DNA from: Rhodosorus marinus CCMP1338
Lineage: Eukaryota; Plantae; Rhodophyta
Length of the DNA stretch: 64,000 nucleotides
Assembly (NCBI GenBank): GCA_029953675.1
Contig: JAMWBK010000005.1
Coordinates: 1,364,001 to 1,428,000 of the forward strand
Reading direction: 5' to 3'
Shown here: positions 19,691 through 29,973 of the stretch, in pieces
Layout: every line of letters starts with the position of its first letter
Numbering within the stretch: position 1 is the first letter of the stretch
Notes under the pieces: generated by a model
Told to the model about the DNA's origin: nothing
Databases searched by the model: none
Seen by the model: the letters and a program-made list of their open reading frames with translations, nothing else
Program-made: the position numbers and the translations under genes

Positions 19691-21086
19691 TAGGAGACTC
19701 ATGGTTGAGGCAGAACAGCTTTAGGGCACAGGAATGGCGTTGGGATGCGTGACCCAGGTTCGATTTTGAAAACTAAAAAACAGAAACAAGTTCTGGACAA
19801 TAAGGATATCTCATTTTTGCCATAGAACTTCGCGGAGGGCGCCGTTTGAAATCTTGTGGGGGGGGCTGGAGGCTTGTGATTGAACACCTGAGGAGATTAT
19901 GCGTTTCTTGCTTGCGCGCAGTTAAGTGCTTGACCGAGATGCCGTTTATGAGGGACGGGAGTCACCCGCTCCACCTCCAAAATCTTCTTGACCCGCTATT
20001 GTCAGCAACATCCTCACGCTGGGGGAGTCACCGTGGCGGCGTAAACTTCCTCGAAGTCTCTCCTTTCTCCTGCGCAAAACCTCTAGCAAACAGTCGTGCA
20101 TTCAATCGCTGCACTGATCCATCGCTATTAGTTACCAGGGCAGTAGCGGCCTTTTGAAAGGATCAACCTTGGCACCCTAGACTTATTATGGATCTTTTCA
20201 CCCTATCCTTAGCCTATAAATCTCCTAGTTATAGCATCTCACTCTTTTCAAGAGATAAGCAGAAAAAGCGTAGAAGGATAGATTTGGGATATAAACCTAA
20301 TTTGGGAATTATTGGGTAGCAGATAAAGTTTGAATTCGACAAGAATTCGGAAACCACGCCAAACGTCAATTCAGGAAGGCCAAACTCCTATCTGCCAGAC
20401 TGTCTGTCCTTCATTTTTGTAGATTGTCTGCTTTCAGGACATGAAAACTCCCGAATCCATCTGCCAGGCTGTCCCTAGTTTTTATTTTGTTTATCTAGGG
20501 CGTCTTTTGTCTTGACGGTAAACTCCGGATATTGGGTTTGGCGCGCTAAGCTTTTCCTAATATAAATATTTGGGAATGGCGGTAGGGTTTCGTGGTTGGG
20601 TGAAGGAGGCGCGTCGGGTAGGGGGTGGGGTTTTGAGTTGACTTGAGAAGTTGTTAGGATTGAGAAGAGACAGTGGATTTAGGGGCGTGTTAGGTATTCA
20701 GCAACTGGGTAAGAATTGGTTAGGATACGCAAGTTTTTTTCGGGTTTGTTTTTGTGAATCGTGTGGGAAAGGAAGTTTTCTGGGGGGGTGGGGGTGGGGG
20801 AAAGAACGAGGAACGGGGTTGGTTGACTCCTTTGTGACGCTTGCTTTGTGCTAAAAGCGGGGAAGGGGATTTTCTGTTGGTGGCAGGTTTTGGTGTGGTC
20901 GAGTGGGATGGTTTTGATCATTGTGGCAGATTGGCTTGATCTGTGCACGGGAATTTGGCGCGGCTGAGGGTGTGCGGAAGGGTCAACAGCAGCTGTTCTG
21001 GACTTTTGCTTTTGTTTCTGCTTGCAGTTTGTGCAGGACACCTGAGGAGGTAGCGCCATTCCTCCAGCAGCTGGTTCGTTTTGAGA

Positions 21087-22109
21087 ATGGCTTACGATTA
21101 CTATAGCACCCTTGGGGTTGATCAAAGCGCGAATTTAAGTACGTTGACGACGGCATACAAAACCTTGGCGGCTAGGTACCATCCCAGCCGACAAGAGAGC
21201 AGTTCTGTGCTGTCCAAATCGTACTTCAAGCTAATAGCTGAAGCCTACCAAGTCCTGTCCAACAAGTATCTGAGAGTACTCTATGGAAAGTTTGGGAAGG
21301 GGGAAGCCGGCAAACCTTGGGCTGAAGTCCTCGTAGAAGCAATGTCGGGCAACACCTTTTCTGATGAAAATCGTCCGGTTCTCGTTACCGCGGAAGAGTT
21401 GTTCAAGCAGGTTTTCGGAGTCAGCGATATAAGCAGTGCCAATGATATAACACCAGCACCACCTCCGAAAAGGCAGCGGCCGAATGAAGCCACCAGCATT
21501 TATCCAGGGGCTCCAACGAGTTGGAGGAATCGTAACCTTCCGAAAGATCCCGACAAGGAGATGGTTTACTCTATCTCTTTGGAGGATCTCTACAAGGGGG
21601 TCAGGAGGAGGCTCAAACTGACTCACACTATCATAGACAAACATTCGGGAACTCCCGTAAGGGTATCCGAATTGAAGGAGTTTGTTCTGCGACCTGGAAC
21701 CTTTGCCGGAACTAAGGTAAGATTCGAAAATGCGGGTGACGAAACTCCTGGTAGGATTCCAGCCGACGTCGTACTAGTCGTTCATGAGAAACCGCACAGC
21801 TGCTTCGTCAGAAAAGTGAACGACCTCGTCGCGACCTACAATATTTCTCTTCCTGATGCGCTGACCGGGACGACCCTTAAGCTGACATGCTTGGATGGTA
21901 AAGAACTTGCGATTCCAATAACGGAAGTCGTCAAACCTGGCTACACGAAGAGAATCGCTGAAGCCGGAATGCCGCTGAGGAAATCTAATTCAAGGAAGTT
22001 TGGAGATTTGCTCGTCAATTTCCAAATCATGTTTCCACAAAACCTTTTGACAGCAAGGAAGGAAGAAGTCCGAAAGCTGCTTACCGAGCAGGAGGACGAC
22101 GATATCTAA
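21087..22109 (+). CDS. DnaJ/Hsp40 class B-like protein with a non-canonical J-domain motif (HPS)
   Basis: N-terminal J domain (DYYSTLGV...ARYHPS...FKLIAEAYQVLS) and C-terminal substrate-binding domains (ISLEDLYKG, GDETPGRIPADVV, ISLPDALTG, GMPLRK...GDLLVNFQIMFP). Confidence 0.88.
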   Translation: MAYDYYSTLGVDQSANLSTLTTAYKTLAARYHPSRQESSSVLSKSYFKLIAEAYQVLSNKYLRVLYGKFGKGEAGKPWAEVLVEAMSGNTFSDENRPVLVTAEELFKQVFGVSDISSANDITPAPPPKRQRPNEATSIYPGAPTSWRNRNLPKDPDKEMVYSISLEDLYKGVRRRLKLTHTIIDKHSGTPVRVSELKEFVLRPGTFAGTKVRFENAGDETPGRIPADVVLVVHEKPHSCFVRKVNDLVATYNISLPDALTGTTLKLTCLDGKELAIPITEVVKPGYTKRIAEAGMPLRKSNSRKFGDLLVNFQIMFPQNLLTARKEEVRKLLTEQEDDDI

Positions 22110-22328: not shown

Positions 22329-25300
22329 TCAACCCTTCAGCAGCAGCTCAAAACGATCGATTAGATCCTCGATGGTCTCCATTTCCTGTTTGTACTTGGC
22401 CTGTTCGAGCGAGTGGTTGGGTATCGGAATCAGTAATTTGTGCTGGGCCAGCTGAATCTTGAGCACAGCAGCTTACCAAGTTGGCTGTGTTCTTCTCCTG
22501 TACATTTTTCGGGACGTTCTTCTCGTAGTCCGGTACGGACATCTTCTTCTGATACCCCTCCACAAGGATTTTCTTCTCTCTGGCGTTGCCTCTAAGCTTC
22601 GTCAGCTCAGCCTCGACGTCCACGAGGCCAGCAAGAGCCATATGCACCTCCGTGTTCTCGTTCACCACAGCAACGCCACAACCGCTTGGGACGTTTCCGG
22701 AACCGAGTTTCAAAATTTCAACCTTGCTGCTCCTAGACAATGTTGCGATCTTAATCGATGTTTTTTGCCCATCCTCAAAGGATTGATCATCCCTGCACAA
22801 TACATAGATCTCCGGTCGCGCCGAAGGCGTCAAGTTGTACGCTGCTCTCAAGCTCCGAATGGATTTGGTGATTTCCATTGCGGAATCCACTTGTCTATGT
22901 GCCCCTGGAAAAGCCTGCCGCGTAAAACGAATGGAGACACAATGTCAGGCCGGCGAAGAAAGCAAAATCTATTGCGAAGTTCTGAAACGGAAGCAAAGCA
23001 AATATCACTTGAGGCTTTTCGTCTCATCACCATGCTCTCCGAGTACTGCGGAAATGCGCTTAATGAAATCGAGATGGCATCGTCGTGCTTTTCCCGGTTC
23101 GGAAGCCTCTGGAACAACTCCTCCGTCAAAAAGGGCATGATCGGGTGAAGCAACCGCAAGCCAGAGTGCAAGCAATGGTACAGAACATGAAGTGCGTAGT
23201 TTTTCGCGTCTGGGTCTTCACCGTTCACAACTGGTTTGATGACTTCCAGATAGACATCACATAGTTCATAGAGCCAAAACTTGTAGGTCGCAGAAACAGC
23301 ATTATATAAAGCGAATCCCTTCATAGCGTTTTCGGTGTCCCGGCAGGCGATGTTCAGACAATCCAATATATACAGATCCATGGGGTCACTGTGTTCCACA
23401 GCTTTTTGCAAATTCTCCGGTTTGAATACAAAATCTTCTCCAAGATTGGAAAGCGCAAAGCGGCTAGCATTCCACAGTTTGTTGCAAAAGTTTCTGTACC
23501 CCACGACGCGTTGAACGTCCAAATTGATATCCCTAGCCTGCTGGGTGTACGCTAGCAGTCCACATCGAAGAGCGTCCGCTCCACATTCTGGAATTCCATC
23601 CGGGTAGTCTAGTTTCATACCGCTGTTGGCTTTCTCCAACTCCCTGGGATCCAAATTCGACTTTTGCAGCTTCTGTAGGAGCTGATCCAAGTTCGTACCA
23701 CCGATTACCTCTAGAGGGTCTATCACGTTTCCTAGAGACTTTGTCATTTTCCGACCATGCTTGTCCCTGACCATGGCATGCAGATAGACCGTCTTGAAGG
23801 GAAGCTTGTCAGTTAACGCGAGACTCATCATGACCATCCTCGCTACCCAAAAGAACAAGATGTCATGGCCCGTCTCCAACAAAGTCGTTGGGAAAAAGCC
23901 TTGAAGATCCTTCGTTTCCTCAGGCCAACCGAAAACAGAAAAAGGAAATAGTCCAGAGGAGAACCAAGTGTCCAACACGTCCTCATCCTGTTCCAAAGTG
24001 AGTTCTGCACCGTCAACTCCAAGCTTTTCCGCAGCTCGATTTCTTGCGTCATCTTCGTCACGCCCCACAATCCATTCGCTGGAGCCGTTTTTGGCAGCCG
24101 CAAGGTATGCTGGAATCCTGTGTCCCCACCAGAGCTGCCGGGATACACACCAGTCGCGGATATTATCCAACCAGTTGAACCAAGTCCCCTCAAATATGTT
24201 CGGTACCAGCTTCAATTCTCCGCTGCGCACAGCCTCTGTGGATCTGCGCGCAATTTCCTTACAATCAACCCACCATTGCGGTTTTAACAAAGGCTCAATG
24301 ATATCTGCTGTTCGAGAGCACAACCCCAGACGCATAGGATTGTCTGTCTTGCCGCGGAGGAGAGCCTTCGCCTCCAGCGCCTTCTCCACTTCAACACGAG
24401 CCTGGTATCGCTTCATTCCGGCAAATTGTCCACAGCTGTTGTTCATCAAGCCCTCGTCGGTGAGTATAGAGACTTCCTCAAGGTTGTGCCTCCTTCCGCA
24501 CGCAAAATCGTTGGGGTCGTGAGCTGGGGTGACCTTGACTGCTCCAGTTCCGAACTCCATGTCCACAAGCTCATCATCAGCGATGATCTTCAACTTCCTA
24601 TCAACAAACGGGTGAACGAGCTCGGACCCAATCAGGTGCTTGTATCGGCTATCGTTCGGGTGCACTGCTACAGCCACATCTCCCAACATAGTCTCCAATC
24701 TCGTTGTAGCAATGACCAGCTCTTCATCACTCCGCTCAACTTTATAGGCGAAGTGAGTAAGAACCCCAAACTCGATTTCATCGTCGTGATTTGGCACCTG
24801 GACACGGGCGCAAAAAGGACGTAAGCGAGCTACCCGTCGTGGGAAACACAGACGCGTGCAAGCTCTTCTATAATCGAAAAGTTGTATATTCCCTACGTAC
24901 CTTCATCATCGTTCTCCCTGTAATATCAACGTAGTCTACCTCAATATCAGAAAGAGCTGTTCGCAGCTTGCAGCACCAGTTCACCAGTCTCGTGTCGCGG
25001 TATATCAAGCCTTTGTCGTACAATCGAACGAACGCTTCGTTCACAGCAATTGACAACTTCTTAGAGAACGTAAACTCCTCCCTCGTCCAGTCCACCGAAA
25101 GCCCCATTTTCCGAAGCTGCATTGTAATCTGGGCACCGTACTCATCCTTCCACTTCCAGACCTCGTTAACGAATGCTTCTCTGCCCAGATCATGTCTCGT
25201 CAGGTTCTTTTCCCTAGCAAGCTTCTTTTCCACCACTACCTGCGTGGCGATTCCGGCGTGATCAACTCCAGGCAAGTACAACGTAACACGACCATGCATT

Positions 25301-25815
25301 CTGTGCCAGCGGGTAATCGTGTCCTCGATAGTGGCCATCAGGGCGTGCCCCAAATGCAAAGATCCGGTAACGTTTGGAGGCGGAATGACCATAACAAACT
25401 TCTGATCGTCGTTTCTCTTCAGTGCCTCCTCCACATCTGCTGTGAAGAACTGCTGGGCCTCCCACCACTCCCCCCACGCACTTTCCACATACTTGGGATG
25501 ATACGCAGGCAGCATTTTCTTCATAATCTTCTTTTCGCCCTTGGGCGTGCTGTCCATCAGGTCCTCCGCAGAGACCTGCTGCGCCTTCTTCTTCTGCTTA
25601 TTCGCAGCGGCTTTACCCTCGCCCTTGGGAGCCACATCGCCTCTCTGAGCCTCCCCAGCATTGCCTTTCGCCGCCTTCTTCTTCGCGACCTCTACCATCT
25701 TCGCCAACTTCTTCTGACGAGCTTTCGGCAGCTTCCCCTTCTCCTCATCGCTCATCTGCATGAACTGCTCCACTGTCACCGGCGCGACATCCGCAGAACT
25801 GTTCTGATCCGCCAT
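22329..25815 (-). CDS. VARS: Valyl-tRNA synthetase, cytosolic type (4 exons)
   Basis: [15 protein letters not shown] (HIGH motif), [44 protein letters not shown] and a C-terminal coiled coil. GT-AG introns restore the frame. Confidence 0.97.
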
Positions 25816-26596
25816 ATTTTCTACTTCTTATACAGCTCTAATCATAAACAAACCAATACAAAAAAATATTACCAAACTGAAAGCGCTTCCAGTAGCCGAC
25901 ACCATCCATCCACCTCCTCCCCCTCGCCAACAACCCAAACAGCCGTCCCTTTCCATCAGCTCAGCACTCCACATCCCTTTCCAAAAAACCCTGTTCCTAA
26001 ATATATGCACATATATTTCACGTCCCATCAGGACGTCATATATACTTAAAATTCTTAATCTAAACAATTTATATTTCGCATAAAATTGCTTTTTCGAGTA
26101 AGTTATTCTTCTTGTTGTGGATGTAAATACAGTAAATAGTTATTTTATTCTCCGATAATTCGAGTTGTTTAGAAAACGTTGCTAATAATATGGTACGAAA
26201 ACATCGGTGTCAAATGTGATTGTTTTATTAAAATTTCCCCGCTCAATCACCCCCCTTTAAACATGAGGTGGAATATCGAACACGAATACGAACAAGGGGT
26301 AAAAAATACACACATGTCTTTGCTTATATATTTATTATACGAAATAATTTTCGATTAGTATGGAAAGGAGACACGAATTTACCCCTAGTTCAAACTGGAC
26401 TATTCTTCTCCTCGTGATAAGATTTGTCACCCCTATGCATTGATTTCATATGTGTAATTTTCGACGACGGGATTTTTTAATTTTTAAAAGATTTATGGCT
26501 TTGATGGATTTGGATCGGTTGGAGTTGATTAGGGCTTCTAGATGTTCCAGCGATCTCTGGTTCTGTTGCGGGGAAGTTGGTGGAGATGGAGGGGCG

Positions 26597-26995
26597 ATCG
26601 TCTTATTGTCTGCTACCAAAGTTCGATGTTAGTATGCTATATAAGCGAATCTGGATTAGTTTTAGATATTCTACTCGAACTGAACCAGTTGGTTTTTAAG
26701 GGTTTTGTAAGCCAGAGTTGTTGCTGTTCTAGACCAACCAGTGGTACCTTTGCTGACAGCCCAAACCAGTTTTGTTTCCTAGATCGATGGTGCCGTTATC
26801 GTCTTATCGTCTTGTACCAACGTTCGATGTTAGTATGCTATTTAAGCGAATCTGGATTAGTTGTAGATATTCTCCTCGAACTGAACCAGTTGGTTGTTAA
26901 GGGTTTTGTAAGCCAGAGTAGTCGCTGTTCTAGACCAACCAGTGGTCCCTTTGCTGACAAACCAAACCAGTTTTGTTTCCTAGAGCGATGGTGAA
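26597..26995. repeat. Tandem duplication, 2 x 201 bp, about 90% identical (estimate)
   Basis: atcgtctta starts at 26597 and 26798; gttagta at 26628 and 26829; the units align along their whole length. Confidence 0.92.
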
Positions 26996-27679
26996 GGTTA
27001 GCGCGCATGAAAGTCCAGCAATTGGACAAATCGATACCTGAACGCGAAGTTGTCCTAGTCCAGAAACATCCAGCGGCACAGCTTCCTACTAGACGTTCGG
27101 GGATTGACGGACCGTCCGCACGTGAGCTTCGAGATATCGCATCCTAGTGTCCAATAATGTCGCTGTTTGAATCCATGAGGAAGTGAATAGCCAGTGGTAG
27201 TCTGAGCTTCCTCATACGGAAGCAGATGCTTAGTACAAGATAACATATCGAGGCACAGGGGGTTCAAATCAGACGAAAACATTGTGGTGCGGCAGCTGCA
27301 ACTTAACCTTTGCACATCGTTCACCGCCAGGTTCTCTGTGAATGCGTTGTTAACCACTAGAAGTCTGGCCGTCACTGCTAGCAGACCACACTCCAGCGAG
27401 CATGGTAGTTACTTGTCTTCCTCGTCAAGCCTTTAAGCGGAACCTCTGGAGTCCTATCGCTGACACTGGGGTCGGCGTGTGATTAGGGTTGTGTCGTTCT
27501 AGATAGCTTATCGTTCGGTGCCGAAAGTTTCAGATATAATCTACATGGAGCATTTACCAGAGATCTATAGAGCCACCCCGAAACCTTTCATCTGTTCCGG
27601 TAACGAAGGAATAGCTCAATATTTTTCGTTTCACAACTTCCCTTGAACGTTGTTAATGGCAGACAAAACTGAAGAGGCA

Positions 27680-27912
27680 GAGTGTGCCGGAGATACGATC
27701 ACTGAGAGTGGGATCGCCATTGTGTGATTTGGGAAGACCAGTCGACTTGTACGCTTCAGAGAGGCGAATGCTTCTGTTTGATGCTGGAAGACGACAGCCC
27801 TGGAGAAGTGGATCGTGCTGGAGATACGATCACTTGAGAGGGATCGCCTTTGAGTGATTTGGAAAGGCAGTCGACTTGCACGCTTCGGAGAGGTGACTGC
27901 TTCCGTTTGTTT
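27680..27912. repeat. Tandem duplication, period 131 bp, upstream of ispF
   Basis: ggagatacgatcact...gggatcgcc...gtgattt...agtcgacttg.acgcttc.gagagg starts at 27689 and 27820. Confidence 0.8.
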
Positions 27913-27994
27913 CTCTTTTAGCTAAGGATTCCTTTTCGGGTCTGATTTGATACGGTTTAGAACTGACGGAAGTGCCGCGGTAGAGCCGTCAGCG

Positions 27995-29216
27995 ATGGCC
28001 TTTGTCGGAGGCCTTGGTGTTGCGGATCTCAGAGTTCGGAGGACAGCGCCGTTTGTGAGGCAGAGGAGGCGCCCTGCTGTGCTGAGAATGGCAGCCGTGG
28101 GACCACGAGTCGGTCATGGATTCGATCTTCATCGACTGGAGCCTGACAACAAGCTAATTTTGGCCGGTGTAGTTCTGGACCACACAGTTGGGTGTGTGGG
28201 ACATTCGGATGGAGACGCGGTTTACCACTGTGTTGTCGACTCTGTCCTCGGAGCTCTTAGTATGCCGGATATTGGCCAGCTGTTTCCTGACAAAGATCCG
28301 CAGTGGAAGGGAGCTCCATCCGACGTGTTCATGAGGGCCACGAAGGACTTGATGGAAGAAAAGGGTTACGAAATTGGAAATCTTGATGTCACAGTCATCC
28401 TTGAGAAGCCAAAGCTGTCCCCCCACAAGGACAAAATGAGGGCGAACATTGCGGAATTGCTCGACTGCGACCTAGACAACGTTAACTTGAAAGCCAAAAC
28501 TCACGAAAAGGTTGACGCGCTTGGTGAAAACCGAGCCGTGGCGTGCCACACAGTAGTGATGCTCGTTCCCAGACCACTCGCACACGAAGCTCAGTCCACG
28601 GTAGCTCAAGCAACAGCAGGTATCTCTAAAACAATCTAAACTAGACAACGTCAGGGTGCTGAGCAACCAAAACATCCCATCCAACAATCTCTCGTTTTCA
28701 CAGTGATGGTCGACGACCCAAAGTCGCTAGCACAAGACTGGATGCAAATGGCATCGAAGAGGGTGATGGTGAATCTCGAAGCCGGAACTGCGGCTGTCAG
28801 GGAAGCAGAAGCCGCGATCCAAGATGACCATGTGCTTCAGACTCTGTACGAGACTATAAAATCTCGGAAGGGTGCCGATCCTTCCAGTTCATGGACGGCA
28901 AAACTGTTTTCCAAAGGAAGATCCAAAATCTCTCAAAAGGTAGGCATGTCAGTAGAGCCACCCTCCTATTCCTGTAGGAACGAACTGAGCCATTGGCCTA
29001 CGGCACACTCTCCAGGTTGGTGAGGAAGGGACTGAGGTGGTCATAGCCGGAATCAGAGACGACAAGTCTGAGTTAATAAAGGAGAGCGCAGACCTGCTCT
29101 ACCATCTCGAAGTACTCTGGGCAGATGCTGGTGTTGAGCCAGACGAGGTTTGGGATGAATTGAGATCTAGAGAAAACACCTCAGGAATAGCTGAAAAGCA
29201 GTCTAGATCTTCATAA
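27995..29216 (+). CDS. ispF: Plastid 2-C-methyl-D-erythritol 2,4-cyclodiphosphate synthase (IspF), predicted to be spliced in frame to a C-terminal HisE domain (exons 27995-28619, 28704-28939, 29016-29216); the unspliced form ends at 28639
   Basis: MAFV transit peptide and IspF motifs RVGHGFDLHRL, HSDGDAVYHC, DIGQLFPD, NLKAKTHEKVDALGE. Phase-1 donor AG|GTATC at 28620 and acceptor ttttcacag| at 28703 join the IspF and HisE frames. Confidence refers to the IspF identity; the fusion itself is about 0.7. Confidence 0.9.
28704..29216 (+). CDS. hisE: Phosphoribosyl-ATP pyrophosphohydrolase (HisE) domain
   Basis: VLQTLYETIKSRK...SSWTAKLFSKGRSKISQK|VGEEGTEVVIA...ESADLLYHLEVLW...VWDELRSR. Intron at 28940-29015. 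No HisI domain and no transit peptide of its own. Confidence 0.9.
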
Positions 29217-29526: not shown

Positions 29527-29973
29527 TTATTTGCCCTCCTCGTCCACAACAGTTTGAGGATACACGACAAGGAAGAGATACCACCATCCTATCACGCCCA
29601 CGGTGATGAAGAAGGCTATTGCCTGAAACCATCCATGTAGGGTTGTCCAAGAGACAGAAACAACAGCTCCACCAGTGCCCAGGATCGTCCAAGGCTGGCA
29701 CCACCAAGGCTTGCTTTCGGAATAGACTCTTCGGAACGGGGAAGGACAAAATACATAGATTGAGGAATCGAAATCTGCAAGACCAAAAAAACAACAAAAG
29801 GACACCTTCCACATCTGGTCTGGAACCTACCGTTGCGTCGTTCGGGCCATTGAAACCAAGTCATCCCCCGCAGCCTTCATCGTGACGCTCAGGTTCGTTC
29901 GAGGACATTGTACAACCCCCGACCGTCTACGATGATTGAATCCGTACGTTGTAACAAATCCGAGCATAGACAT
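29527..29973 (-). CDS. Small plastid membrane protein with KPWWCQPW motif (cyanobacterial/plant DUF6737-like)
   Basis: Spliced product MSMLGFVTTYGFNHRRRSGVVQC...TTQR|VYSESKPWWCQPWTILGTG...GWWYLFLVVYP...*. GFV transit peptide plus two hydrophobic segments. The family name is from memory. Confidence 0.7.

What the first reader, a model, noticed from the sequence alone, without database searches (positions are those of the whole stretch)
27995..29216. Intron-mediated IspF-HisE fusion linking the MEP isoprenoid and histidine pathways
Seen in sequence: the HisE ORF begins only about 65 nt after the IspF stop and has no transit peptide. IspF carries an unusual C-terminal extension ending at a donor (GCAG|GTATC, 28620). 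A pyrimidine-rich acceptor (ttttcacag|, 28703) lies 84 nt later, with a branch-like GCTGAG at 28658; this intron size is typical for the window. Splicing gives G|TG-ATG and joins the two frames into a ~353-aa protein: transit peptide, IspF, a ~55-aa linker, then HisE. The intron contains the in-frame TAA at 28637, so retention yields normal IspF. Established knowledge: IspF makes MEcPP in the plastid MEP pathway; HisE is normally free, fused to HisI (many bacteria, plant HISN2) or part of HisI-HisE-HisD (fungal HIS4); plant His synthesis is plastidial. Inference: HisE reaches the plastid through the IspF transit peptide, and splicing could toggle between IspF alone and the bifunctional protein. 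I do not know of this fusion being characterised, but cannot confirm novelty.
Basis: partly seen in the sequence, partly recalled or inferred. Interest (0 to 1): 0.85.

Follow-up and report, generated by a model that had tools for sequence, protein, structure and literature searches.

The report
Red-algal IspF–HisE fusion gene, real
This is one three-exon gene of the red alga Rhodosorus marinus that makes a single, probably plastid-targeted, protein joining an isoprenoid-pathway enzyme (IspF) to a histidine-pathway enzyme (HisE); the fusion is real and shared by all red-algal classes sampled, but the gene model is already in public databases and nothing shows that splicing switches it on and off.

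Summary
Removing an 84-nt GT-AG intron (28620-28703) and a second 76-nt intron (28940-29015) gives a 353-aa ORF with a full IspF domain and a full HisE domain.

The same 353-aa protein is already deposited for Rhodosorus marinus (KAJ8904868.1). Transcript-derived proteins from two other R. marinus strains carry the same junction.

About 80 further two-domain proteins were found. Every named one is a red alga, from Cyanidiophyceae to Florideophyceae. In a Cyanidioschyzon merolae-type contig and in Porphyridium purpureum the fusion is one uninterrupted ORF. So it is an old, constitutive red-algal fusion, and the intron merely lies in the variable linker.

An intron-1-retained transcript (IspF only) does exist, but so does an intron-2-retained one. 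This looks like ordinary incomplete splicing, not a switch.

The HisE domain is closest to stand-alone alphaproteobacterial HisE (60-68% identity).

I found no paper describing the fusion. I could not find where HisI is encoded in red algae.

Verdict: valid, catalogued but uncharacterised, of moderate interest.

The parts
27995..28619 (+). Exon 1. It encodes a predicted transit peptide (aa 1-37, nt 27995-28105, starting MAFV...), the IspF domain (aa 38-191, nt 28106-28567) and the first 17 residues of the linker. It ends with the first base (G) of codon 209.
   Evidence: TIGR00151 ispF, 194 bits against a cut-off of 116. Zn-ligand positions D44, H46 and H78 are invariant in alignment A1. Against strain contig L005 the exon is 91% identical with no gaps, and differences by codon position are 6/10/41. 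AF2 pLDDT is below 50 for residues 1-31 and about 90 or more for the domain.
28620..28703 (+). Intron 1: 84 nt, GT-AG, phase 1, lying in the interdomain linker. It holds an in-frame TAA at 28637-28639, so retention ends the ORF as IspF plus GISKTI.
   Evidence: Transcript-derived 353-aa ORFs P0121 and P0124 lack it, and P0123 retains it. It is only 65% identical to L005, with indels that are not multiples of 3, yet both splice sites are conserved. A related species has an intron at the same position and phase (L001, 119 nt).
28704..28939 (+). Exon 2: the rest of the linker (aa 209-~249) and the N-terminal part of the HisE domain (from about aa 250, nt 28826).
   Evidence: The linker part is 90% identical to L005 with no gaps, and differences by codon position are 2/1/10 in the fused frame. 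ATG 28706 is ACG in L005 and Thr in P0121.
28940..29015 (+). Intron 2: 76 nt, GT-AG, phase 0, inside the HisE domain between K287 and V288.
   Evidence: It is retained in transcript ORF P0122 (322 aa) and removed in P0121, P0124 and P0125. It is 77% identical to L005. L001 has an intron at the same position (107 nt).
29016..29216 (+). Exon 3: the C-terminal part of the HisE domain, with the EExxE and ExxDxxYH motifs, and the stop codon TAA at 29214-29216.
   Evidence: NF001613 HisE, 135.9 bits against a cut-off of 120; TIGR03188, 106 against 42.7. E290, E291, E294, E310, D313, Y316 and H317 are invariant in A1.

Best explanation
Positions 27995-29216 (+) are a single nuclear gene of the red alga Rhodosorus marinus. 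It has three exons and encodes a 353-aa bifunctional protein.

The protein consists of:
- a red-alga-type N-terminal transit peptide (MAFV...);
- an IspF domain (2-C-methyl-D-erythritol 2,4-cyclodiphosphate synthase, MEP pathway);
- a poorly conserved, probably flexible linker of about 55-60 aa;
- a HisE domain (phosphoribosyl-ATP diphosphatase, second step of histidine synthesis).

Shown:
- The gene structure, and its expression as one mRNA.
- The integrity of both catalytic domains.
- The presence of the same fusion in every red-algal class sampled. In two of them it is one uninterrupted ORF, so the fusion is ancestral and constitutive, and the Rhodosorus intron simply sits in the linker.

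Inferred:
- One transit peptide imports both activities into the plastid, and each domain carries out its canonical and unrelated reaction. This is co-targeting and co-expression, not substrate channelling.
- From established knowledge, IspF is a trimer and HisE a dimer. The fusion may therefore assemble like the bifunctional IspDF enzyme, as two IspF trimers bridged by dimers.
- The intron-retained transcripts are by-products of incomplete splicing. The intron-1-retained form carries a premature stop upstream of another intron.
- The HisE module most likely came from a stand-alone alphaproteobacterial-type hisE.
For: Gene model and transcripts:
- The spliced ORF is 353 aa and identical over its full length to KAJ8904868.1 of R. 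marinus.
- That genome was annotated with BRAKER using RNA-seq mapping (PMC10250338).
- MMETSP transcript ORFs P0121 and P0124 (353 aa, two other strains) read straight through the junction as ...ATAV(T/M)VDDPKS.
- Transcript_27476 carries both the IspF ORF (P0123) and the HisE ORF (P0125), so both lie on one RNA.

Comparison with a diverged strain (L005):
- Exons, including the linker directly after the acceptor, are 90-97% identical, have no gaps, and differ mainly at third codon positions.
- Intron 1 is 65% identical and has indels.

Related species:
- L001 has an intron at the same position and phase, and no ATG directly after the acceptor.

Domains:
- Pfam and NCBIfam equivalog models score above their cut-offs for both domains.
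- Catalytic residues are invariant across 16 red algae, while the linker varies from about 18 to 100 aa.
- AF2 gives two confident domains and low confidence for the N-terminus and the linker.

Distribution:
- About 80 two-domain hits were found. All named ones are red algae: Rhodosorus, Bangiopsis, Purpureofilum, Porphyridium, Gracilaria, Agarophyton, Chondrus, Pyropia, Cyanidioschyzon, Cyanidiococcus and Galdieria.
- The unnamed ones have red-alga-like N-termini and no signal peptides.
- The ORF is uninterrupted in L002 (C. merolae-type, 368 aa) and L003 (P. purpureum, 397 aa).

Origin of the HisE module:
- It is 60-68% identical to stand-alone HisE of Rhodospirillales.
Against: - No enzymatic, localisation or oligomer data exist for any member.
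- The transit peptide is judged only from its sequence character. No targeting predictor was available.
- I could not find the red-algal HisI gene. So I cannot say whether this is the only HisE in red algae, or whether a HisIE also exists.
- The first ~26 nt of intron 1, including the TAA, match at 24 of 26 positions between two strains, against 32 of 60 alignment columns (10 of them gaps) for the rest of the intron. This could hint at a functional retained isoform or a splicing element. It is a post hoc observation on two sequences.
- The alphaproteobacterial origin rests on best hits, not on a phylogeny.
Confidence: 0.82

Rival explanations
1. Regulated splicing switch. Rhodosorus uses retention of intron 1 to adjust the ratio of IspF-only protein to bifunctional IspF-HisE.
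For: - An intron-1-retained transcript ORF exists (P0123, 214 aa, ending ...ATAGNSKTI*), and further unspliced contigs exist (L004, L005).
- The in-frame TAA and the first ~26 nt of the intron are conserved between strains, at 24 of 26 positions.
Against: - Intron 2 is retained in another isoform (P0122). That isoform yields a truncated HisE, so retention is not specific to the junction.
- L005 retains both introns, so it is pre-mRNA or DNA.
- The C. merolae-type contig and P. purpureum have no intron there, so the fusion is obligatory in them.
- In the related L001 the intron start is not conserved, and read-through adds 40 residues instead of 5.
- The retained mRNA has a premature stop upstream of another intron, which is a typical substrate for nonsense-mediated decay (inference).
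- No quantitative or condition-dependent data exist.
Confidence: 0.1
2. Two adjacent independent genes, or a dicistronic message. IspF ends at TAA 28637, and HisE is translated on its own from ATG 28706.
For: Both ORFs are open without splicing. The intron-retained transcript carries both ORFs.
Against: - Full-length spliced ORFs come from transcripts of two strains, and the RNA-seq-informed genome annotation agrees.
- ATG 28706 is ACG in another strain, and there is no ATG after the acceptor in L001.
- The sequence between the acceptor and the HisE domain evolves as coding sequence in the fused frame.
- The same fusion is a continuous ORF in other red algae.
Confidence: 0.02
3. The C-terminal domain is no longer a histidine enzyme. 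It would be a HisE-derived all-alpha NTP pyrophosphatase recruited to serve or regulate the MEP pathway, while a separate HisIE makes histidine.
For: - HisE belongs to the MazG-like all-alpha NTP pyrophosphohydrolase superfamily, in which substrates shift (established knowledge).
- A fusion to an unrelated pathway enzyme, conserved across all sampled red-algal classes, invites a functional link.
- Other eukaryotes studied have HisIE (PMC1963479; diatoms in PMC3901274).
Against: - Equivalog-level HisE models score above their curated cut-offs over the full model length.
- The domain is 60-68% identical to bona fide stand-alone bacterial HisE.
- The metal-binding motifs are invariant.
- The fusion is retained even in the strongly reduced C. 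merolae genome, which argues that it is not redundant (inference).
Confidence: 0.06

Closest known systems
Bifunctional IspDF (e.g. Campylobacter jejuni, PDB 1W55; also 8XHU)
   Same: An IspF domain is fused to a second enzyme on one polypeptide. PDB hits 1w55 and 8xhu match the IspF part. In IspDF a trimeric IspF and a dimeric partner build a hexamer (established knowledge), which is the likely architecture here too.
   Different: In IspDF the partner is IspD, from the same pathway, and it lies N-terminal to IspF. Here the partner is HisE, from an unrelated pathway, and it lies C-terminal. The NCBIfam IspDF model scores 180 bits against a cut-off of 417 and matches only the IspF part.
HisIE / plant HISN2 (PDB 7BGM, 6J2L) and fungal HIS4
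   Same: They contain the same PRA-PH (HisE) catalytic module as the C-terminal domain of a fusion protein. In plants it is plastid-targeted (PMC8102479).
   Different: In those proteins HisE is fused to HisI, the next enzyme of the same pathway. Fani et al. 2007 reported hisIE in all eukaryotes they examined (PMC1963479). Here no PRA-CH domain is present, and the HisE module is of the stand-alone bacterial type (NF001613/NF001611 above cut-off, HisIE model NF002747 below).
Stand-alone alphaproteobacterial HisE (Rhodospirillales; e.g. WP_211558279.1 of Gluconobacter, and Azospirillum and Magnetospirillum entries)
   Same: 60-68% identity over the whole 105-aa domain, with the same motifs.
   Different: These are free proteins of about 105-135 aa with no IspF domain and no targeting peptide.
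Plant plastid IspF (Arabidopsis, PDB 2PMP)
   Same: It is the best solved-structure match for residues 38-191 (E 3e-67). Green-plant IspF proteins are 61-68% identical. Both are nuclear-encoded with an N-terminal extension.
   Different: Green-plant IspF proteins end after the IspF domain and carry no PRA-PH domain.

Membership tests
IspF (MEcPP synthase; Pfam PF02542, TIGR00151) | Full-length match to the family model above the curated cut-off | tested here: met
   PF02542: 194.3 bits against a cut-off of 26.7, model positions 2-154 of 155. TIGR00151: 194.2 bits against 116.45.
IspF (MEcPP synthase; Pfam PF02542, TIGR00151) | Zn2+-binding Asp/His/His triad (E. coli D8, H10, H42) | tested here: met
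   D44, H46 and H78 lie at the corresponding positions and are invariant in 16 red-algal sequences. The residue correspondence is from established knowledge.
IspF (MEcPP synthase; Pfam PF02542, TIGR00151) | Catalytic conversion of CDP-ME2P to MEcPP plus CMP; homotrimer | not testable with these tools
   Needs an enzyme assay and SEC-MALS or a structure.
HisE (phosphoribosyl-ATP diphosphatase; PF01503, TIGR03188, NF001613) | Full-length match to equivalog models above the curated cut-off | tested here: met
   NF001613: 135.9 against 120. NF001611: 110.1 against 99. TIGR03188: 106.1 against 42.7. PF01503: 78.4 against 21.3.
HisE (phosphoribosyl-ATP diphosphatase; PF01503, TIGR03188, NF001613) | Acidic metal-binding motifs EExxE and ExxDxxYH of the all-alpha NTP-PPase fold | tested here: met
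   E290, E291, E294, E310, D313, Y316 and H317 are invariant in A1. The AF2 model gives a confident helical bundle for residues 250-340.
HisE (phosphoribosyl-ATP diphosphatase; PF01503, TIGR03188, NF001613) | Acts in histidine synthesis (PR-ATP hydrolysis; sole or necessary HisE of the organism) | not tested
   Needs a scan of whole red-algal proteomes for PF01502 and PF01503, plus complementation. No HisI motif is present in the window.
HisIE / HISN2 bifunctional enzyme | PRA-CH (HisI, PF01502) domain on the same polypeptide | tested here: not met
   Only YgbB and PRA-PH are found. NF002747 HisIE scores 97 bits against a cut-off of 187, on the HisE part only.
IspDF bifunctional enzyme | IspD cytidylyltransferase domain N-terminal to IspF | tested here: not met
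   NF006899 scores 180 bits against a cut-off of 417 and matches only model positions 226-379. The N-terminal 37 aa are a low-complexity presequence.
Regulated intron-retention switch | Retention specific to the switch intron and conserved with the gene | tested here: not met
   Both introns appear retained in transcript isoforms. The junction intron is absent in C. merolae-type and P. purpureum genes.
Regulated intron-retention switch | Isoform ratio that depends on conditions, and an IspF-only protein product | not testable with these tools
   Needs read-level RNA-seq and proteomics.

The most novel reading that the evidence does not exclude
The fused IspF-HisE may be the only HisE that red algae possess. 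Red algae would then be eukaryotes without the HisI-HisE fusion found in the fungi, plants and diatoms examined so far. They would run the second step of histidine synthesis on a module of alphaproteobacterial type riding on an MEP-pathway enzyme. The trimer-times-dimer geometry would give a hexameric or higher assembly that physically couples two unrelated plastid pathways. The fusion would be a clean molecular synapomorphy of Rhodophyta that was not passed on to red-plastid-derived algae. In intron-rich Rhodosorus, retention of the linker intron might additionally release some IspF-only protein.
Probability: 0.35. Interest if true: 0.5.

Novelty: already known. Interest (0 to 1): 0.3.

Why it matters
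The fusion is a conserved "Rosetta-stone" fusion of two enzymes from unrelated pathways.

- It is a caution for function prediction that relies on domain fusions.
- It is a possible lineage marker for red algae. It was seen in all red-algal classes sampled and in no named non-red organism, and diatoms use HisIE instead.
- Red-algal entries are named only "IspF" or "hypothetical protein", so histidine-pathway reconstructions for red algae may wrongly report HisE as missing.
- If it is the sole HisE, it changes the textbook statement that eukaryotes carry hisIE.

None of this makes it a new kind of system. It is a catalogued but uncharacterised bifunctional enzyme.

Tried and rejected
- Literature. 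Seven full-text searches and several papers were read. None describes an IspF-HisE fusion. Many "hisE" hits were "HiSeq".
- HisI. A motif scan of the six-frame translation of the window found nothing. I found no way to retrieve a red-algal HisI with the capped search tools: any HisI query would return only its own close relatives among the 120 listed hits. I therefore left the third homology search unused.
- HisE-domain homology search. It listed only bacterial stand-alone HisE and did not list even the identical self-protein. That tool's lists are therefore not exhaustive, and absence claims based on it are weak.
- Bacterial promoter/terminator scan of the junction. It found nothing and is not relevant for a eukaryote.
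- Contig of the closest eukaryote-looking stand-alone HisE (P0149). It was an uninformative metagenome scaffold.
- Separate-genes and dicistron reading. Rejected on the transcript and comparative evidence.
- "Intron-mediated origin of the fusion". Rejected because other red algae have the fusion without the intron.

Full report
**1. Observation**

- An ORF starts at ATG 27995 and runs to TAA 28637-28639, giving a 214-aa IspF.
- A GT lies at 28620-28621 after GCAG. An AG lies at 28702-28703 after a pyrimidine-rich tract. The interval is 84 nt.
- Splicing leaves G|TG-ATG and keeps the frame.
- A second GT-AG intron is needed to reach the stated ~353 aa. By the GT-AG rule it is 28940-29015 (76 nt, phase 0). 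My first splice was shifted by one base, but it gives the same mRNA because 28940 and 29016 are both G.
- The spliced CDS is 1062 nt, or 353 aa, and ends at TAA 29214-29216.

Domain searches confirm both halves.
- Pfam finds YgbB/IspF at residues 38-190 (E 2e-57) and PRA-PH/HisE at 254-339 (E 5e-22).
- NCBIfam equivalog models pass their curated cut-offs for both domains: TIGR00151 at 194 bits against 116, NF001613 at 135.9 against 120, and TIGR03188 at 106 against 42.7.

Another intron in the window, in the ValRS gene at 24798-24900 on the minus strand, is 103 nt with GTACGT...CAG. Introns of 75-100 nt are therefore normal here.

**2. Identity of the locus and proof of the fusion**

The 353-aa product is 100% identical over 100% of its length to "hypothetical protein NDN08_001382 [Rhodosorus marinus]". 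This is KAJ8904868.1, which UniRef names as IspF.
- The window is therefore from the nuclear genome of the red alga R. marinus.
- That genome (strain CCMP1338) was annotated with BRAKER trained on RNA-seq mapping. It has 8392 genes and 24,821 introns (PMC10250338).

The 90%-identity cluster of this protein also holds ORFs predicted on MMETSP transcripts of other R. marinus strains.
- P0121 and P0124 (both 353 aa) read through the junction as ...ATAV(T/M)VDDPKS.
- P0123 (214 aa, ...ATAGNSKTI*) and P0125 (132 aa, MQMASKRV...) lie on the same transcript (Transcript_27476). This is an intron-1-retained RNA that spans both halves.
- P0122 (322 aa) has intron 1 removed and intron 2 retained.

So the two ORFs are one transcription unit, and the spliced fusion mRNA exists.

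**3. Comparative test within Rhodosorus**

Contig L005 comes from another strain. It is unspliced and about 85% identical at the DNA level. Its alignment with the window gives:

| Segment | Identity | Gaps | Differences by codon position |
|---|---|---|---|
| Exon 1 | 90.9% | none | 6/10/41 |
| Linker part of exon 2, directly after the acceptor | 90.1% | none | 2/1/10 in the fused frame |
| Intron 1 | 65% | indels, not multiples of 3 | - |
| Intron 2 | 77% | 1 gap column | - |

- Both splice sites of intron 1 are conserved.

A more distant relative, L001 (Logan run SRR22824290), is 78% identical in IspF.
- It has introns at the same two positions and phases (119 and 107 nt).
- It has no ATG directly after the first acceptor.
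- It splices into a 345-aa fusion.

**4. Distribution**

The first homology search returned about 80 proteins carrying both PF02542 and PF01503.
- Every named one is a red alga: Bangiopsis, Purpureofilum, Porphyridium purpureum, Gracilaria, Agarophyton, Chondrus, Pyropia, Cyanidioschyzon merolae, Cyanidiococcus and three Galdieria species.
- The list then drops straight to single-domain IspF of green plants.
- The unnamed two-domain hits cluster with named red algae at 56-100% identity. Where complete, their N-termini are of the red-algal M..F.. type with no signal peptide.

The fusion is a single uninterrupted ORF in two red algae from other classes: the C. merolae-type contig L002 (1107 nt, 368 aa) and P. 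purpureum L003 (1194 nt, 397 aa).

From this I conclude:
- The fusion is ancestral to red algae and constitutive.
- The intron in the linker is a feature of the intron-rich Rhodosorus lineage, not the mechanism of the fusion.
- Diatoms are reported to have a conventional bifunctional HisIE (PMC3901274).

**5. Anatomy of the protein**

An alignment of 16 red-algal sequences (A1) shows:
- The IspF Zn ligands (D44, H46, H78) are invariant.
- The HisE acidic motifs (E290, E291, E294, E310, D313, Y316, H317) are invariant.
- The linker varies from about 18 aa (Galdieria) to about 100 aa (Pyropia), with little sequence conservation.

AlphaFold2 on A1 gives:
- pLDDT around 90 or more for both domains.
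- pLDDT below 50 for residues 1-31 (presequence) and 197-248 (linker).
- pTM 0.49, which fits two independently placed domains.

No PDB entry contains both domains. The nearest solved structures are:
- Arabidopsis IspF (2PMP).
- Stand-alone HisE (2A7W, 1YVW).
- The bifunctional IspDF (1W55, 8XHU).

**6. Origin of the HisE module**

An exhaustive HMMER scan of 1.84 billion cluster representatives with the HisE domain found mostly proteins of 105-150 aa among the best 150 hits.
- The closest named ones are stand-alone HisE of Alphaproteobacteria, especially Rhodospirillales, at 51-68% identity.
- This points to a monofunctional alphaproteobacterial-type hisE as the ancestor. It rests on best hits, not on a tree.
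- The IspF module is closest to plastid IspF of green plants (61-68%).

**7. How it most likely works**

- Shown: one gene, one mRNA, and two intact catalytic modules under purifying selection.
- Inferred: the MAFV-type presequence imports the whole protein into the plastid. There, IspF makes MEcPP and HisE hydrolyses PR-ATP. The two reactions share no intermediate, so the advantage is probably co-targeting and co-expression rather than channelling.
- Inferred from established knowledge: IspF is a trimer, HisE is a dimer, and IspDF is a hexamer built in this way. An analogous assembly is therefore plausible.

**8. The splicing-switch idea**

An IspF-only ORF does arise from intron-1 retention, and such RNA is present. 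Several points argue against a switch:
- Intron 2 is retained in another isoform.
- L005 retains both introns.
- Two red algae from other classes have no intron at the junction.
- The retained RNA has a premature stop upstream of another intron.

One point in its favour: the first ~26 nt of intron 1, including the TAA, match at 24 of 26 positions between two strains. This is post hoc, and the segment is not conserved in L001.

I put the switch at about 10%.

**9. Context**

The neighbouring genes are:
- a DnaJ protein (21081-22109, +);
- valyl-tRNA synthetase (22348-25815, -, with introns);
- a convergent DUF6737 gene (29527-29814, -).

None is a histidine or MEP pathway gene. No HisI motif is present in the window.

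**10. Novelty and verdict**

The exact gene model and dozens of orthologous two-domain models are already public, though they are named only as IspF or "hypothetical protein".

In the searchable literature I found no description or characterisation of the fusion. Fani et al. 2007 state that all eukaryotes they examined have hisIE.

The open and mildly interesting question is whether this is the only HisE of red algae. I could not answer it with the tools available.

Interest 0.3. Novelty class: already known (catalogued but uncharacterised).

Noticed in passing
window 27662-27914: Two tandem copies of a ~130-nt unit (76-87% identical) lie directly upstream of the ispF-hisE start codon. The core motif CAGTCGACTTGYACGCTTCRGAGAGG occurs only at these two places in the window, against 0 expected. 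Contig L005, which may be an unspliced transcript, starts inside this region and also matches both copies. The repeats may therefore lie in the 5' UTR or promoter.
   Followed up: partly
window 28620-28645: The first ~26 nt of intron 1, including the in-frame TAA, match at 24 of 26 positions between two R. marinus strains, against 32 of 60 alignment columns (10 of them gaps) for the rest of the intron. The segment is not conserved in the more distant L001. It could be a splicing element, or it could be chance.
   Followed up: partly
window 26542-26994: An ORF with no Pfam match has a translation that contains an internal tandem duplication (...LIVCYQSSMLVCYISESGLVLDILLELNQLVFKGFVSQS... appears twice). 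This indicates a tandem DNA repeat between the ValRS and ispF-hisE genes.
   Followed up: no
window 29527-29814 (-): A small gene encoding a 95-aa DUF6737 protein (E 8e-17) converges on the 3' end of ispF-hisE. This leaves about 310 nt for both 3' UTRs.
   Followed up: partly
window 22348-25815 (-): A valyl-tRNA synthetase gene is split into at least three ORF pieces. One clear intron of 103 nt (GTACGT...CAG) lies at 24798-24900. A DnaJ gene lies at 21081-22109 (+).
   Followed up: partly
P0071 (Chondrus crispus gene model), alignment A1 columns ~345-425: The deposited Chondrus model lacks the conserved start of the HisE domain, including the SWT motif. The 96%-identical P0023 was not aligned here. 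The Chondrus model is probably mis-predicted.
   Followed up: no
P0147 (218 aa, ENA metagenome clusters): The best-scoring representative for the HisE domain is a protein with two tandem HisE domains. The second copy is degenerate: ESADLLYHL has become ASDGLLFHL. The source organism is unknown.
   Followed up: no
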